Part shown: piece by piece, positions 22,821 to 30,070 of the stretch
Layout of the letters: every line of letters begins with the position of its first letter
Numbering within the stretch: position 1 is the stretch's first letter
Source of the DNA: Salpingoeca rosetta
Lineage: Eukaryota; Protista; Choanoflagellata
DNA length: 64,000 nucleotides
NCBI GenBank assembly: GCA_033442325.1
Contig: JAWQFM010000031.1
Coordinates: 732,025-796,024 of the forward strand
Direction: 5' to 3'
Notes under the pieces: generated by a model
The model's database searches: none
Told to the model about the DNA's origin: nothing
Seen by the model: only the letters and a program-made list of their open reading frames with translations
Position numbers and translations under genes: made by a program

Positions 22821-23505
22821 CTACACGTGGTGGGAGCGGCGGCGGGCCATGCGTGTGCGCACGGCGTAGGTGCTGACCTGCGCCATGCGGTCGCCGACGC
22901 TACTTGTGTTGGTTGTCTTGGCAAGCAGCTGCGAAGCAAGGTCCTGCACCTTCCCTTCCACGGGGAGCAAGGGCTCCGCAGTGGTGGTTGTCGGGTCGTG
23001 CGCACCGATCAGCAGGTACGTCTTCATCAGGCCCTTGCCCGCAATGTCGATGTGGCCCCGCGACACAAGCTCAAACGGGTGGTCGGACGGCAGCGCCTGT
23101 GTGAAGCGGTAGCTCGTCTGGATGCACCCGGGCAGGCCATTGCTCTCCATCAGGCTCGCCACGCTCACGGTGCTGCCGAAGAAGCAGTAGCGTGGACGGG
23201 CGCGGCCAACGACGCCGGCCATCAGCGGACCAGAGTGCAGCCCAACGCGGATGCGGATCGGCTCGCCATCCAGCGGTGATACAACCGACTTGGCCGTGTG
23301 GACCATCTCGATGGCCAGGCGGGCGATGCGCAGGGCGTGGTCCTCGCACTCCTCCGGGCAGCCGGCGGCCACCATGTACGCGTCGCCAATCGTCTCCACC
23401 TTGTAGCAGCCGTGCTTGTCCGCCAGGTTGTCAAACTTGACAAACAGCTCATGCAGCATCTCCATCACCTGACGGGTGTGCATGCATGTGTGTGTGCGTG
23501 TGTGA

Positions 23506-23549
<44 letters not shown>

Positions 23550-25005
23550 TGGGTGTGTGTGTGTGATTGAAGGATGAGTGATTGGTTGAGTGTGTGTGTG
23601 TGTGAGTGAGTGGCTGCAGGATACAGTGGTGTTTTCAGCCTTGTCGCATGTGCACGTGTTATTTGTCAGGCTCAACAAGCAATTAAGCGCAAATTGAGAT
23701 AAGAAAAGCACGGCACTCACGTCCGTGGCTGGCACGTCTGAGGAGATGTTGGTGAAGCCCGCAATATCGCTGAACAGCACGCTCACCTGCCAAAGGAAAC
23801 GGACAAAGGGACAACACAACCAGCAAATGGATGAGAGAAGCGTTTACAACGCGTATCGACACAAACACACACGTACACGTACACACACACACACACACAA
23901 AAGTACACGCATACACACATTTACTCGCACGTGCATCTGTGCGCCATCACCAACTCACGTTGTCGTACTGCTCTGCTGGCGGAATTTCGCCCCGAGCGAG
24001 CGAGCTGGCAACAACCTGTATTGGGGCAAGAGATGCGGGAGATAATGCGTACGCAAGCATGAAGGCATGGGGACATTTTGACTGTGTGAGGACACCAACG
24101 CCGCTGTTGCTTCTTCGCTCATGACACACACACACACACGCACACACACACACACGCCACATAACATCAACACACAACACAACAGAGCACGTCACCACGC
24201 ACCGGAGGGAGGATGCTGTGGAGGAGGCCGTCAATCTGCTTCTTCTTGTCCTGGATCTCGAGCATGGACTGGTCAAGCTCAGCCATGCGCCGGTCGACCT
24301 CGTTGGAGTTCTTGGCAGAGGCAGACTGGAACATGGACCCGTACAGGAACTCGCGGCCGTGGCTGTGCAGCGGCATCTCGGACAGCTCGATGCGCTGCGC
24401 CTCCATCTCCTCGAGGGAGCGCAGGGCCGGCGTGCCGAAGAACACAACGACGTCGTGGTCGCTGTTGTATGTGAGCTGCCCGTGCAGCTTGATGTTGTCG
24501 GCCTTGGCGTACAGCCGGTTGGCCATCATCAGCATGTCTGAACTCGACGCGTTGGATCCGCGGAAGGAGGATGCGCACGACACCAGGGACGACCGCATGT
24601 CCGACGCCATGTCACCGCCATTGCCCATGAGCGACATGCCCTGCATGCCGGAGGCCAGGCCGTGTGCGTCGTCATCGCGCAGCAGCTTGGCGTCGACAGA
24701 GAAGAGGCACGACACGCCGTCCACGTCCTTGAGCTCGTCAAACTCGGACGAGATGTCGACCGGCCGCAGCATGCGGAACACCTTCTTGAAGGGCTTTCCG
24801 GCCTGTGGCTCCTCGAAGCGCGCTGCAAGGTGCTTGCCCAGCGACACAATCTTCATGTCGCGGTCAAAGGCAAAGTGCCATGGAAACAGGTCGTTGGTCA
24901 CGGACTTGCCCAGGTCAATCGTGCACGCTTCCTTGATCGTCTCGTCGACCTCCGTCGATTCGCCAAAGCCCCTGCATGTAAGTGTGTGTGTGTGTTGTGT
25001 GTGTG

Positions 25006-25056
<51 letters not shown>

Positions 25057-26401
25057 GTGCGTGGGTGTTTGCAGGGAAGCTTAGGGGTGGGCTGGGAGAC
25101 ATGTGGAGTGCGTTGGCAACATGAAGGACAAGCCCGCACACAATCAAGTTCACACACGCACACTCACGTACACACACAGACACATACACACAGATACATA
25201 CACACACACTGATGCGCACGTACCGTGGGTCCATGTAGACGTGGAAGACGTCGTGGTTGCTTCCTTGGCCCTTCTTGATGCGGTGGTGGATGTCAATGTC
25301 CAGGTCAAAGAGGCGAAGGGCAGCTGCTTCCAGCGCACCCATCATGAACATGCTCAGGCCGGCATTGGAGCTGTAGTAGTGCACGGTCATGGAGCCGTCA
25401 TCGTTGCGGACCGGGCGGATGGAGGGTGCGCGCATCTTGGGGAAGGACGGCGTGAACGACTCGTGCAGGCTGTCCAGGTTCCCCAGGAGCGTGAAGAAGT
25501 CGCTGCCGAGCGTGCGCAGGGACGAGCCATACCCGGTCTCCAGGATGCCTGCCAAGAAGAAGCGGCCGGCCTCAAACTTGCAGTCCTCTTGACTGCGGCC
25601 AGTCACCTGTCATTGTGCGATTGCGAGGAGAGGGCGCAGACAAGGCAAGATGGGGCTTGGTAAGGTGGGGATCAATGAGGGCGAGTGAAGTGAACAGGCG
25701 GAAACAGCGAATTGTGCATGCTGTCACACATGGGAATGACAGGGATCAAGTGCCTTGCGCGCTCACGCACAAATTGGCGCGCAAACGACACACGCCATGT
25801 TCCGCTTGCAGCTGTTGCTTCAGCCGATCATTACACACACACACACACACATACACACACCCATATCCCATCTCGCATATCATACGCACAAACACAGATC
25901 ACATTTTGCACACACATCACATCACGCATCACATCACATCACATCACATCACGTCACACACACACACACACACACACGCACGCAACACAACATCACATCA
26001 AGCACACCTTTGCGACAGCTGTAAGGAATGAGCCTGTCTGATCGTTGGAGTAAAACCTGAAGAAGTCATCAGGGCGGCCATCAAAGTCCACCTCCGCCAT
26101 CACTTGGGTCAGCAGGTCTTCGCCATCAGGCAAGGACGAGATCCATGCTGTCAGGGCCTAAAGGGTGACATGTGTGACAAGGGGTCCGCATAGCGTGTGA
26201 GCCTGACATTGCTGTGTTGGTTGGCTTGCTGGTTTACCACAACACAGCAATCGCGCTTGCGATCGCAATCGCACGCGCCAACTTCCGATTGCCACCAGAA
26301 TCGCGCGTGCAGACGTTCATGCAGCCAGGACCGAGGGAGGCAGGATCAAGCTTGACTTTACAAGGTTCGATTGATTGTACCTTGTGCAGGAGTCCGTACA
26401 T
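22821..26401 (-). CDS. Soluble guanylyl cyclase (H-NOX + PAS/coiled coil + class III cyclase), 7 exons
   Basis: MYGLLHK start exon 26401-26381. H-NOX: NLDSLHESF..MRAPSIR..HYYSSNAGL. PAS: LFPWHFAFDRDMKI..LSEMPLHSHGRE. Coiled coil: LLHSILPPVVA. Cyclase: VSVLFSDIAGFT, YKVETIGDAYM, IRVGLHSG, PRYCFFG. Confidence 0.95.
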
Positions 26402-27190: not shown

Positions 27191-30070
27191 CTACTCCTCA
27201 AAAGGGGACATGTATTGGACAGAAGCTGCAATGGCGGCGCCCACAGCAAAGCTTTGCGCAAAGGAAAACAGGAAGCGAAGCAGGCCCGGTTGGGCGGCAG
27301 AGGCGTGCGTGGCATCGAGGTGGAGGCCTCGGGTCAAGGGAACGGCAACCTTGAGCTGGAAGGCGGTGGCAAAGATGACCAGCAGCCACGACACGGTGAC
27401 GCGCAGTGCCGTTGCCTCCACGACCCAGAGCGGCAGGAACAGCGGGCCCGCCATGGCCAGCCCAGCCATCGCCGTCACAGCCGCAATGCCGACAGCCTGC
27501 GTGTAGGGGGCGTTGCTGCACAGCATGGCAAAGAGCGTGGCGATGAGGAAGACGTTGAGGGTCTGCACGTTATCGACGGACAGTGCGCCTGCGGCCTGCT
27601 CGTCGCACAGGTCGGCCACCAGCTGGTTGGCGTGCGCACGTGTGCATCGGTCACGCAGCGGGCCGGTGCAGTCAGGGTAGCGCGCAAGCGCGGCCTCGCA
27701 CGTATCGCCGAGCTCGTCCAGGTCTGCGCCCGTCCACAGCAGTGCCGGCAGCGCGTGCACGCCGCCAAACAGGGAGAAGTTGACGTGGGTGACGGCGGTG
27801 AGGAAGAACACGGAGAGCGCGTGCGGGTAGAAGGGGTGGGTGACGCGGGACACGATGGCGGCGGGCACGAGGGCAAGAAACCCCGGCAGGCGGTCCATCA
27901 GGGAACGCATGGTGACCAGGGCCAGGTACGCGCTGCCAGCCAGGGGGAGGGTGAAGGCCGCAACGTAGAACAGCGACGGCCAGGACAGCACCAGCGCGTG
28001 GGCCAACACGTAGCAGGCCGGGGCGACCAGGAAGTTGAAGCCGACCACAAGCGACAGCAGGACCGCCGCGTGCGCCAGCGTGTGCCCGTACAGCGCGGTG
28101 GCCAGGCCAGCCACGGCCAGCACGCCGTCACCCACACGGTACCCGTCCCCGTGCTCCTTCAACAGCACACACGCGGCGTCGGAGATGGCCACAAACTGCG
28201 CAGAGTACACATCAAACACGTCAAACGCTGGCACAGCACCGCTGCCACCACTGCTGGTGTCGCTGGTGACAGGGCGCAGCCACGGGTAGGGCCCGTGTGC
28301 GGTGTCGGCGCGCGACGCAAAGAGCGGAGCAACCGCACGCGTGCCTTCGTCGTCCGTATCGCGCGTGGGGGTGGGGAAGGAGAGCAGAAGCACGGTGGCG
28401 AGCACGTGCGCTGCAAACGTCCACAGCGCAACAGAGGCGAGGGAGAGGCGGGGCGTGACGGCGTGGGCGTGGGCGGTGGCGCGGAGTGCGCGCGATGACG
28501 CGAGATGCACCCCGACACGATGACCGAGAAACAGGCCCGCGGCCAGCACCAGGGTGACCGGCAGGAGGGGCGCGTTGCCCAGCAAGAGCGATGGCAGCGC
28601 CATAAAATGCGCGAGGACGTGTGTGACCTGTGGGGGCAGGTGCAGCATGTCTGGGAGGCCAGCAATCCAGGATGTGGCTGTTCCCGGGCAGTAGTGGGCG
28701 CAGGTGATGGCGAGCAGGGTGCCTGCAAGCACGGGGTTGAGCAGTAGCGCCAGGAGCGGCCGCGCGTCTCCGGCGAGAACAACGCTGAGCACGCTGTTGA
28801 GCAGGTCGAGGGCGCCCGTCTTGTCTGCGAGCCACAGGGTGGGGCCCCGGAACCTGAGAGCAAGGGTCAGGGCCAGCTGCAGCAGCACCAGCGCCCGCAC
28901 AAGCTCCCACACAACGTTGCCGGAGCCAACGAGGAGGAAGTGTGGCAGGGCGCTGGCGTGGGCGTGGGTGTTTGGGACGCCGTCACCGTCGGTGGCCATG
29001 AAGGACGACGCGTTGGAGAAGAAGAACTGCAGGGCGACCACGGCCATGACCGCCAGCAGGAAGCGCACAACCTTGAACCGAAACAGCTCCACGATGCGCG
29101 ACTCTGCAACGCGGTGCACGAGCTGCGGGCTGAGGAGGGTTGCAGCGTGGATGTCGGTTCGCAGCTGCCCGCGCTCGTCCTCCTCCAGCTCCCCCAAGTC
29201 CATGGCACCGCCCTCTGCGAAGGACTCCACCTGACGCCGGTGCACGATGCGGCGGCGCGTGTGCTCGTCGAGCGTGCTCCACTGCTGGCGGAGCTCAAAC
29301 AGCGCCTGGCGCGTGTGCTTTGATCGGGTGGCAATGTACTCGTCCTCGCTCATGAGCGGGGTGAACCTGTCCAGGACAGGCGACGAGGCCGGCGTGAAGA
29401 AGGACGGCTGCGTTGATCCGCGACGCGAGGACAGCGGGGAGGCCAGGAACGAAAAAGACGACGCCAGGAAGGACGTGACGCTGCTGTTCACAACAGTGGT
29501 GCTGCTGAACGTGCTCGCGTTCATGTTGTCCGGCGAATCCGCCTCCTCTTCACCAAAGCCGCCACCAAACTCGCCATTGTTGTTGTGACCGGCGTTCATG
29601 ATGCCAGCAGCCACACCCATGTCGTCGTCATCGTCGCTGTCATCGGACAAGGAGGGGATGGGCCTTGTGGTGCCACCAGAGGAGGCCCCAAATCCATTGG
29701 TGCTGTCCGCACCTCGATGCCTGCGCGCTGATGCCGCGGACAGTGGCCGTGGCGCTCGCCTTGGTGGCTGCGACGGTGTCCCTGGTGGGTTCAGGTCGTC
29801 TGTTTCTGTGGACAGCCCGGATGGCATCAGCCAGATGACCGCCTCATACGTGACATGGACAAGGATGAACAGGACCGCGGACGGCGTCCGTGCGTCGGTC
29901 AGCACGGCCCACACAAAGTCTTGCACGTTGTCAAGCAGCTCCAACAGGCCACCCCAAACAGAGCTCCCGCCTCGGCCTTTGCCTTCGCCTCCTTGCTGCA
30001 CACTCATCAGCACAATCAGGCACATGGACAACACCAGGGCCGCCCAGGCCACTGTCGTCAACTTTAACAT
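27191..30070 (-). CDS. Intronless 959-aa multipass membrane protein with a NEMP/TMEM194-like motif
   Basis: Long GC-rich ORF free of microsatellites, with an ATG start, a hydrophobic N-terminus and many hydrophobic helices. Motif: [37 protein letters not shown]. Confidence 0.8.

What the first reader, a model, noticed from the sequence alone, without database searches (positions are those of the whole stretch)
22821..26401. Soluble guanylyl cyclase with alpha-subunit-like active site and altered heme motif
Seen: both metal-binding Asp (FSDI, IGDAY) and the guanine-specifying Glu/Cys (KVE, RYC) are present. The catalytic N-x-x-x-R reads S-V-A-S-L (GSTVSVASLMES, ~23151-23165). The H-NOX keeps the proximal His (LDSLHES) and Pro (APS), but Y-x-S-x-R is Y-Y-S-S-N (25364-25378) and the distal position is Phe, not Tyr. 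Established: animal sGC alpha subunits supply the Asp residues and lack Asn/Arg, so they need a beta partner; the YxSxR Arg binds heme propionates. Inference: this is an obligate heterodimer subunit with weakened heme binding, suggesting an alpha/beta-like division of labour outside animals.
Basis: partly seen in the sequence, partly recalled or inferred. Interest (0 to 1): 0.7.

Follow-up and report, generated by a model that had tools for sequence, protein, structure and literature searches.

The report
Choanoflagellate guanylate cyclase with half an active site
This is an expressed, conserved gas-sensor guanylate cyclase gene of the choanoflagellate Salpingoeca rosetta that keeps the metal-binding half of its catalytic site but has lost the other half, so it probably works only when paired with a sister cyclase, as the alpha subunit of the animal enzyme does.

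Summary
Window 26401-22821 (minus strand) is a 7-exon Salpingoeca rosetta gene. Its 697-aa product (H-NOX, HNOBA, class III cyclase) is already in NCBI under an automatic name.

It keeps:
- both metal Asp (D467, D511)
- the phosphate Arg (R556)
- the guanine pair (E507, C577)

It has Ser, Leu and Ala where Asn548, Arg552 and Lys593 of human beta-1 lie. That is exactly the published alpha/C1 residue pattern.

The changes are real and maintained:
- RNA reads at about 200-300x show no variant at these codons.
- A syntenic environmental orthologue (72% identical) has the same changes.
- dN/dS is 0.11-0.37.

A tree puts the gene inside the choanoflagellate paralogues, far from animal alpha and beta. 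The alpha-like state therefore arose independently, and at least twice within choanoflagellates.

- None of the 13 sGC loci in the genome lacks a metal Asp, so there is no beta-type partner. A partner would be a fully competent paralogue.
- The YxSxN change is shared by a whole clade that includes catalytically intact paralogues. The Phe at the distal position is normal.

Heterodimerisation, haem binding and activity are untested. This is a new member of a known kind, of moderate interest.

The parts
26381..26401 (-). Exon 1 (coding part): start codon and MYGLLHK, the first residues of the H-NOX domain. The 5' UTR runs at least to about 26593.
   Evidence: GT donor at 26380-26379. An RNA joint runs from 26156/26157 to 26380/26381 in 4 runs, and a spliced contig reaches 26593. 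The same 8 residues are found in the orthologue L061 at 2719-2742.
26008..26157 (-). Exon 2: N-terminal part of the H-NOX domain (50 codons).
   Evidence: AG acceptor and GT donor. Weak Pfam HNOB match to profile positions 8-55. RNA joints on both sides.
25224..25606 (-). Exon 3: main part of the H-NOX domain. It holds proximal His105 (LDSLHES, 25477-25457), Pro (APS, 25429-25421), Y-Y-S-S-N in place of Y-x-S-x-R (25378-25364) and distal Phe144 (within 25360-25340).
   Evidence: Pfam HNOB E=5e-29. Alignment to human beta-1. Coordinates. dN/dS 0.11 against the orthologue.
24203..24971 (-). Exon 4: HNOBA (PAS-like) domain with a low-complexity loop, and the coiled-coil linker up to LLHSILPP.
   Evidence: Pfam HNOBA E=1.2e-57. 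RNA depth 56-317x.
23959..24015 (-). Exon 5 (19 codons): the end of the linker, just before the cyclase domain.
   Evidence: AG/GT splice sites. RNA joint 23781/23786 to 23954/23959.
23721..23786 (-). Exon 6 (22 codons): first strand of the cyclase domain, with the first metal-binding Asp467 (FSDI, 23774-23763).
   Evidence: Alignment to human alpha-1 LFSDIVGF and beta-1 LFSGIVGF. Coordinates.
22821..23468 (-). Exon 7: rest of the cyclase domain, the C-terminal tail and the stop codon. It holds Glu507 (KVE, 23402-23394), Asp511 (IGDAY, 23390-23376), Arg556, Cys577 (RYC, 23192-23184), Ser584 and Leu588 in place of Asn and Arg (23165-23151), and Ala625 in place of Lys (IAGKG, 23045-23031).
   Evidence: Pfam Guanylate_cyc E=1.7e-47. 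Alignment. Motif table. No read variant. Codons are conserved in the orthologue with synonymous changes around them.

Best explanation
The gene encodes a soluble guanylate cyclase subunit that can supply only one half of a class III cyclase active site.

In these enzymes each catalytic site forms at the dimer interface. One chain gives the two metal-binding Asp and a phosphate-binding Arg. The other chain gives the base-specifying pair, the ribose-binding Asn and the phosphate-binding Arg and Lys.

This protein keeps the first set (D467, D511, R556) and the Glu/Cys pair. It has Ser, Leu and Ala in place of Asn, Arg and Lys.

- **Homodimer:** both sites would lack these three residues, so it should be inactive or nearly so.
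- **Heterodimer with a complete paralogue:** this would have one complete site (its Asp pair plus the partner's Glu/Cys/Asn/Arg/Lys) and one degenerate pseudo-site, as in animal alpha/beta sGC and in adenylyl cyclase C1/C2. Eleven complete paralogues exist in the genome; the closest is P0002.
- **H-NOX domain:** it keeps the proximal His, Pro, Tyr and Ser and has no distal Tyr, so it probably still carries haem and senses NO or CO rather than O2.

Shown here: gene structure, expression, residue pattern, conservation and independent origin. Inferred: inactivity alone, pairing, haem binding and the ligand.
For: - **Residue pattern.** It matches the alphaGC and AC-C1 rows of Table 1 in PMC6005667, position by position.
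- **Selective loss.** All three (four with the Gly-Asp to Gly-Ser change) lost residues belong to the beta/C2 role, while the Asp pair and Arg556 are intact.
- **Conserved in an orthologue.** A positional orthologue on an environmental contig is collinear across three genes. It is 72% identical over 506 aa and has the same S/S/L/A state. Around the motif there are many synonymous codon differences and no amino-acid change.
- **Purifying selection.** dN/dS is 0.19 in the cyclase exon and 0.11 in the H-NOX exon, at dS 0.7-1.4. The domain is maintained, not decaying.
- **Expression.** All exons are covered at about 40-330x in two stranded RNA runs, introns at about 0, and one spliced contig joins all seven exons.
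- **Possible partners.** Eleven S. rosetta paralogues carry the full residue set.
- **Recurrence.** Similar half-site losses, of both alpha and beta type, recur in other choanoflagellates. This is what one expects if paralogues pair.
- **One site is enough.** The review PMC6005667 reports that a single active site suffices in a symmetric cyclase dimer.
Against: - No Asp-deficient (beta-type) partner exists among the 13 sGC loci of this genome, so complementarity is one-sided.
- Pairing with a complete paralogue would halve the number of sites compared with that paralogue's homodimer. This fits a regulator as well as it fits an enzyme subunit.
- No interaction, co-expression, activity or haem datum was available.
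- The Glu/Cys pair, which belongs to the lost half, is kept. Animal alpha-1 also keeps it, so this is weak counter-evidence.
Confidence: 0.55

Rival explanations
1. It is a non-catalytic regulator (pseudoenzyme). The protein binds gas through its H-NOX domain and either titrates canonical paralogues into less active mixed dimers or signals by protein contacts. Its Asp half-site is not used for catalysis.
For: Three catalytic residues are lost. No beta-type partner is present in the genome. A mixed dimer would have fewer sites than the partner's homodimer.
Against: Both metal Asp, Arg556, Glu507 and Cys577 are unchanged in two species at dS 0.7-1.4, and the catalytic core is 100% identical over more than 50 residues. 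A domain kept only as a scaffold would be expected to lose these residues as well.
Confidence: 0.27
2. It is a self-sufficient homodimer with low or unconventional activity. Ser584 partly replaces Asn, and other basic residues replace Arg and Lys.
For: Strong purifying selection on the cyclase exon. The domain architecture is intact.
Against: Asn, Arg and Lys are present in 62 of the 246 cyclase domains tabulated as the full DDECDNRK set, and in every catalytically complete paralogue here. PMC6005667 lists them as the key ribose- and phosphate-binding residues. Leu and Ala cannot bind phosphate.
Confidence: 0.12
3. It is an assembly or sequencing artefact, or a decaying pseudogene.
For: None found.
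Against: - RNA reads agree with the assembly at the motif.
- The reading frame is intact and equals the database protein.
- The orthologue has the same state.
- dN/dS is well under 1.
Confidence: 0.01

Closest known systems
Animal soluble guanylate cyclase alpha-1 subunit (GUCY1A1; PDB 6jt0 chain A)
   Same: - Same H-NOX/HNOBA/coiled-coil/cyclase architecture.
- Keeps both metal Asp, the phosphate Arg and the Glu/Cys pair.
- Lacks the Asn, Arg and Lys that beta-1 supplies.
   Different: - Not an orthologue. The careful tree separates all choanoflagellate sGCs from animal alpha and beta with 100/100 support.
- The replacements are Ser/Leu/Ala here, against Thr/Lys/gap in alpha-1.
- This protein keeps the proximal His, Pro, Tyr and Ser of the haem pocket. 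In the one alpha-signature row that lacks these ligands (Lottia, P0183), the aligned position is Gln, not His.
- No Asp-less beta partner is present in its genome.
Animal sGC beta-1 subunit (GUCY1B1; PDB 6jt0 chain B)
   Same: - Best PDB match (E=3e-76).
- His105, Pro118, Tyr and Ser of the haem pocket are kept.
- Non-Tyr distal residue.
   Different: - Beta-1 has Gly at the first metal Asp position and keeps Asn548, Arg552 and Lys593. This protein is the reverse at all four positions.
- Arg139 of YxSxR is Asn here.
Choanoeca flexa Cf-sGC1 (bioRxiv 10.1101/2022.02.14.480389)
   Same: A choanoflagellate sGC with the same three domains, predicted NO-selective because it lacks the distal Tyr.
   Different: Cf-sGC1 expressed alone binds NO and CO and makes cGMP, stimulated about 6-fold by excess NO. 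It is therefore self-sufficient. The protein here lacks three catalytic residues. I could not obtain the Cf-sGC1 sequence, so its place in the tree is unknown.
Mammalian membrane adenylyl cyclase C1 domain, and chytrid NeoR/RGC heterodimeric rhodopsin-guanylyl cyclases
   Same: Both are class III cyclases in which two different domains form one active site and one pseudo-site. C1 supplies the Asp pair and a phosphate Arg only (Table 1). The chytrid enzymes show that obligate cyclase heterodimers already exist outside animals.
   Different: C1 and C2 are fused in one chain. In the chytrid system RGC1 and RGC2 keep all catalytic residues, and the reason for obligate pairing is thought to lie elsewhere. 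Neither has an H-NOX sensor.

Membership tests
Soluble guanylate cyclase (H-NOX / HNOBA / class III cyclase) | H-NOX (PF07700), HNOBA (PF07701) and Guanylate_cyc (PF00211) domains, in this order | tested here: met
   E=5e-29, 1.2e-57 and 1.7e-47 on exons 3, 4 and 7. Best PDB matches are sGC beta-1 and alpha-1.
Soluble guanylate cyclase (H-NOX / HNOBA / class III cyclase) | Glu/Cys pair that specifies guanine | tested here: met
   E507 and C577 align with beta-1 Glu473 and Cys541.
Soluble guanylate cyclase (H-NOX / HNOBA / class III cyclase) | Complete catalytic residue set within the working dimer, and cGMP synthesis | not testable with these tools
   The protein alone lacks Asn, Arg and Lys. 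Whether a partner supplies them needs biochemistry.
Haem-binding H-NOX sensor | Proximal His plus the Y-x-S-x-R propionate-binding motif | tested here: inconclusive
   His105, Pro, Tyr134 and Ser136 are present, but Arg is Asn138. The same loss occurs in 14 of the 91 tabulated H-NOX rows that keep the proximal His, including catalytically complete paralogues. dN/dS is 0.11. Haem binding itself was not testable.
Alpha/C1-type half-site subunit of a heterodimeric class III cyclase | Keeps the metal Asp pair and the phosphate Arg; lacks the ribose Asn and the phosphate Arg and Lys | tested here: met
   D467, D511 and R556 are kept; S584, L588 and A625 replace Asn548, Arg552 and Lys593. This matches Table 1 of PMC6005667.
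Alpha/C1-type half-site subunit of a heterodimeric class III cyclase | A partner chain that supplies the missing half and binds it | tested here: inconclusive
   Eleven paralogues with the full residue set exist, but none is Asp-deficient. Physical pairing could not be tested.
Animal sGC alpha subunit (orthology) | Descent from the animal alpha lineage | tested here: not met
   The careful tree puts the choanoflagellate clade and the animal clade each at 100/100. The gene nests among canonical S. rosetta and Microstomoeca paralogues. The animal rows were checked by their source names.
Pseudogene | Broken frame, no expression, or neutral evolution | tested here: not met
   The frame is intact, the gene is expressed and spliced, and dN/dS is 0.11-0.37.

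The most novel reading that the evidence does not exclude
Choanoflagellates evolved heterodimeric gas-sensing guanylate cyclases on their own, and more than once. This gene and its environmental orthologue, the Hartaetosiga P0039 / environmental P0119 pair, and the second S. rosetta locus on contig C2 are independent alpha-type subunits. Microstomoeca P0011, S. infusionum P0046/P0049 and the Hartaetosiga P0016/18/19 group are beta-type or doubly degenerate subunits. In this gene the alpha-type subunit still has a haem-competent H-NOX, so the mixed dimer would carry two gas sensors on one catalytic site and could integrate two signals.
Probability: 0.35. Interest if true: 0.6.

Novelty: new member of a known kind. 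Interest (0 to 1): 0.45.

Why it matters
Animal NO signalling depends on an alpha/beta cyclase heterodimer, and how and when that asymmetry arose is not settled. The one choanoflagellate cyclase tested so far (Cf-sGC1) works on its own. A conserved, expressed paralogue with only the alpha-type half-site would show that the sister group of animals reached the same solution independently.

It would also give a tractable system. S. rosetta can be cultured and edited, so one could ask why gas-sensing cyclases repeatedly give up one of their two sites. Practically, it warns that counting sGC genes, or sorting them only by the distal Tyr, does not predict which ones are enzymes.

Tried and rejected
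- **First homology search.** The query was an open frame that runs through an intron. The His/Thr-rich read-through drew junk candidates and only 27 hits passed. I repeated it with the database protein P0001.
- **Wider paralogue DNA.** I therefore merged loci already fetched. The last exon of the C6 paralogue was read from the database protein P0041 instead.
- **Paralogues left out of the tree.** The C2 and C34:91 kb paralogues have no protein reference, so I described them from exon matches only.
- **Joined exon model.** I sent no joined exon model to any search tool. Whole-protein searches used P0001. A local script only checked that the seven exons translate to it.
- **Sequencing error or pseudogene.** Rejected.
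- **One origin of the Asn-to-Ser / Arg-to-Leu state with the P0039/P0119 pair.** Rejected by an AU test, p = 0.0004. The group was named after I had seen the tree.
- **The two minor read variants (23391 C>G, 24323 A>G; about 6-10% of reads).** They sit beside loose ends whose sequence, on my reading, matches a paralogue. I take them for cross-mapping, not alleles.
- **A basic residue that might replace the lost haem Arg.** The search found only a clade-specific Lys7. That is a lead, not a result.
- **First synteny check.** A single PDZ exon found nothing. A translated comparison of the whole contig showed collinearity.
- **Structure prediction.** Not run. It would not decide pairing or haem binding.
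- **Literature.** Only one paper in the library treats choanoflagellate sGCs, and it does not mention homo- or heterodimers.
Full report
**What is there**

The window comes from a 55.4-Mb, 68-contig genome. Its proteins are named Salpingoeca rosetta in NCBI.

On the minus strand between 26401 and 22821 lies a gene of seven exons:
- 26401-26381
- 26157-26008
- 25606-25224
- 24971-24203
- 24015-23959
- 23786-23721
- 23468-22821

All introns are GT-AG, and most are full of CA/TG microsatellite. The exons translate to 697 residues, identical to the database protein P0001. NCBI names it 'NO-insensitive guanylyl cyclase III', an automatic name and not an experimental result.

I sent no joined exon model to any search. 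Exons were searched by reference, and whole-protein searches used P0001. Pfam finds HNOB on exons 2-3, HNOBA on exon 4 and Guanylate_cyc on exon 7.

**Check of the observation**

The alignment to human sGC beta-1 and alpha-1 (PDB 6jt0) fixes the equivalences.

| Human residue | Role | This protein |
|---|---|---|
| beta-1 His105 | proximal haem ligand | His105 |
| beta-1 Pro118 | haem pocket | kept |
| beta-1 Tyr135 / Ser137 / Arg139 | YxSxR motif | Tyr134 / Ser136 / Asn138 |
| beta-1 Ile145 | distal position | Phe144 |
| beta-1 Gly (LFSGIVGF), alpha-1 Asp486 | first metal site | Asp467 |
| beta-1 Asp477 (alpha-1 Asp530) | second metal Asp | Asp511 |
| beta-1 Glu473 / Cys541 | guanine pair | Glu507 / Cys577 |
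| alpha-1 Arg574 | phosphate | Arg556 |
| beta-1 Asn548 | ribose | Ser584 |
| beta-1 Arg552 | phosphate | Leu588 |

The Gly-Asp before the motif is also Gly-Ser. Table 1 of the review PMC6005667 lists exactly this division. AlphaGC gives Asp486, Asp530 and Arg574, with Glu and Cys present but unused. BetaGC gives Glu473, Cys541, Asn548, Arg552 and Lys593. The protein therefore has the alpha/C1 row.

**Is it real and maintained?**

- *RNA reads.* Two stranded raw RNA-seq runs cover all exons at about 40-330x, with introns near zero. First mates lie on the plus strand, as expected for a minus-strand RNA in most stranded libraries.
- *Splicing.* Three introns are seen as read joints. A spliced contig from a 2011 run joins all seven exons with the lengths of my model.
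- *Variants.* No variant is listed in 23136-23269, where depth is about 200x.
- *Orthologue.* An environmental contig (L061, ENA) is collinear with the window across the upstream membrane-protein gene, the cyclase and the downstream PDZ-VIT1 gene, so it holds a positional orthologue. Its product is 72% identical over 506 residues. It is 100% identical from IRIRVGLHSG through the S/S/L motif to FTQALP, and it has IAGKG. Its H-NOX exon has His, YYSSN and the distal Phe.
- *Selection.* Codons around the motif differ synonymously, and the changed residues are conserved. dN/dS is 0.11 (H-NOX exon), 0.37 (HNOBA exon, which holds a variable loop) and 0.19 (cyclase exon), at dS 0.7-1.4.

This is a functional gene under purifying selection in all three domains.

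**Family context**

The genome has 13 loci with H-NOX and/or HNOBA plus a cyclase domain.

- Eleven carry the full catalytic set: P0002, P0004/P0005 (a tandem pair on C16), P0007, P0010, P0014, P0024, P0034, P0037, P0041 and the C34:91 kb locus.
- Two are alpha-like: this gene, and a locus on C2 near 2.69 Mb, where Asn is Ala and Arg is Gln.
- None lacks a metal Asp.

Among 246 cyclase domains from the best 150 library representatives and the other hits, the signature DDEC-SSLA occurs only in this protein and in members of its environmental orthologue's cluster. A short environmental fragment (P0119) and Hartaetosiga balthica P0039 have Asn-to-Ser with Arg-to-Leu or Phe.

Beta-type rows (first Asp lost; Asn and Arg kept) occur in Microstomoeca roanoka (P0011) and S. 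infusionum (P0046, P0049). Doubly degenerate rows occur in Hartaetosiga (P0016/18/19) and S. infusionum (P0038).

**Origin**

A careful maximum-likelihood tree was built from 55 rows and 444 columns covering HNOBA to cyclase. Four very long or compositionally odd rows were left out, as were the two unreferenced S. rosetta loci. Results:

- Choanoflagellate sGCs are separated from animal alpha-signature, beta-1 and beta-2-like proteins at 100/100. The animal rows were checked by their source names.
- This gene and its orthologue join at 100/99.
- They sit among catalytically complete S. rosetta and Microstomoeca paralogues. P0002 is the weakly supported sister (81/84).
- Branch lengths are not inflated.

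An AU test rejects a single clade of this pair with P0039/P0119 (p = 0.0004; the group was named after I had seen the tree). The alpha-like state is therefore independent of animal alpha and arose at least twice within choanoflagellates. This agrees with the published statement that choanoflagellate and animal sGCs diversified separately from one ancestor.

**The haem motif**

The Arg of YxSxR is present in 81 of the 98 tabulated H-NOX domains that have a residue at that column. It is replaced by Asn, Ser, Thr or Gly in 14 of the 91 rows that keep the proximal His. Thirteen of these are choanoflagellate proteins that fall in the tree group holding this gene: S. rosetta P0002, P0004, P0005 and P0007, Microstomoeca P0003 and P0006, and several Hartaetosiga proteins. 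Most of them have a complete catalytic set. The fourteenth (P0105) is an unidentified database protein with an animal-alpha-like catalytic signature.

The change is therefore a clade trait. It is not linked to the catalytic loss, and it is compatible with strong constraint on the domain. Whether it weakens haem binding cannot be told here. A clade-specific Lys7 is the only basic residue that tracks the loss, and I offer it only as a lead.

The distal Phe is ordinary: 32 Phe, 29 Ile and 28 Tyr among 101 domains. By the published rule, it predicts no O2 binding.

**How it most likely works**

A homodimer would have two sites with metal ligands but no ribose- or phosphate-binding Asn, Arg or Lys. 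It should be inactive or nearly so.

Paired with a complete paralogue, it would form one full site (its Asp pair and Arg556 with the partner's Glu/Cys/Asn/Arg/Lys) and one degenerate pseudo-site. This is the arrangement of animal alpha/beta sGC and of adenylyl cyclase C1/C2.

Two observations favour use of this half-site over a purely structural role: the conservation of exactly the C1-type residues over a dS of about 1, and the recurrence of half-site losses in related species. I put this reading at 0.55. The rivals are a non-catalytic regulator (0.27), a weakly active homodimer (0.12) and an artefact (0.01).

Two differences from the animal system stand out:
- No Asp-less partner exists, so the division of labour is one-sided.
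- This alpha-type subunit keeps the haem ligands.

Some animal alpha-signature proteins also keep them (Strigamia, ticks, Trichoplax), so that combination is not unique.

**Known or new**

The protein is in public databases. Choanoflagellate sGCs, including those of S. rosetta, were surveyed by Reyes-Rivera et al. They sorted them by the distal Tyr and showed that C. flexa sGC1 alone binds NO and makes cGMP. That text has no word on homo- or heterodimers or on catalytic residues, and it is the only paper in the library that combines S. rosetta, guanylate cyclase and H-NOX. Obligate cyclase heterodimers outside animals are already known in chytrid rhodopsin-cyclases.

I therefore class this as a new member of a known kind: an independently evolved alpha/C1-type subunit. 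It is of moderate interest, and the key claims await biochemistry.

Noticed in passing
G000:C2:2689712-2694813 (loci L021, L040, L044, L055), minus strand: A second alpha-like sGC paralogue in S. rosetta. Both metal Asp and the Lys are kept, but Asn is Ala and Arg is Gln (FGDA | VAVAAQMES across an intron). Its H-NOX has the distal Tyr and an intact YxSxR. No database protein for it was returned.
   Followed up: partly
P0011, P0044 (Microstomoeca roanoka); P0038, P0046, P0049 (S. infusionum); P0016, P0018, P0019, P0021, P0039 (Hartaetosiga); P0119 (environmental fragment): Half-site-degenerate sGC paralogues recur across choanoflagellates. Some are beta-type (first metal Asp is Ser or Thr, Asn and Arg kept), some alpha-type (Asn/Arg lost), and some have lost residues of both halves.
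   Followed up: partly
H-NOX domains of P0001-P0008, P0016, P0018, P0019, P0021, P0028: The Arg of the haem-propionate motif YxSxR is replaced (Asn, Ser, Thr or Gly) in a whole choanoflagellate clade that keeps the proximal His. The same clade has a Lys at position 7 (MYGxLHKAL) that is almost absent elsewhere.
   Followed up: partly
L061:2700-5620 versus window 26401-22821: The environmental orthologue has the HNOBA, linker and cyclase parts in one uninterrupted frame. S. rosetta therefore has three extra introns (after exons 4, 5 and 6), or the relative lost them. Gene order (membrane protein, sGC, PDZ-VIT1) is the same in both.
   Followed up: partly
P0086/P0198 (Trichoplax adhaerens), P0088 (Strigamia maritima), P0094 and P0111 (ticks): These animal sGC proteins have the alpha-type catalytic signature (Asp pair kept, Asn-to-Thr, Arg-to-Lys). 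Three of them still have His, Pro, Tyr, Ser and Arg of the haem pocket; the tick P0094 has a gap at the Arg position. Several are named 'beta-1-like' by their source.
   Followed up: no
G000:C16:592604-604351: Two near-identical, catalytically complete sGC genes (P0004, P0005) lie in tandem on the same strand about 3 kb apart.
   Followed up: no
window 23391 and 24323: Minor read variants (C>G and A>G, about 6-10% of RNA reads) sit next to loose read ends. Translated by eye, one of these loose ends reads as a paralogue's sequence (DELTEKHGV...). Most likely these are reads of a paralogue laid on a conserved stretch.
   Followed up: partly
window 27191-30070, minus strand: An open frame of 959 codons, rich in hydrophobic stretches, lies directly upstream of the cyclase. 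A collinear counterpart exists on the environmental contig L061 (positions 3-2054).
   Followed up: no
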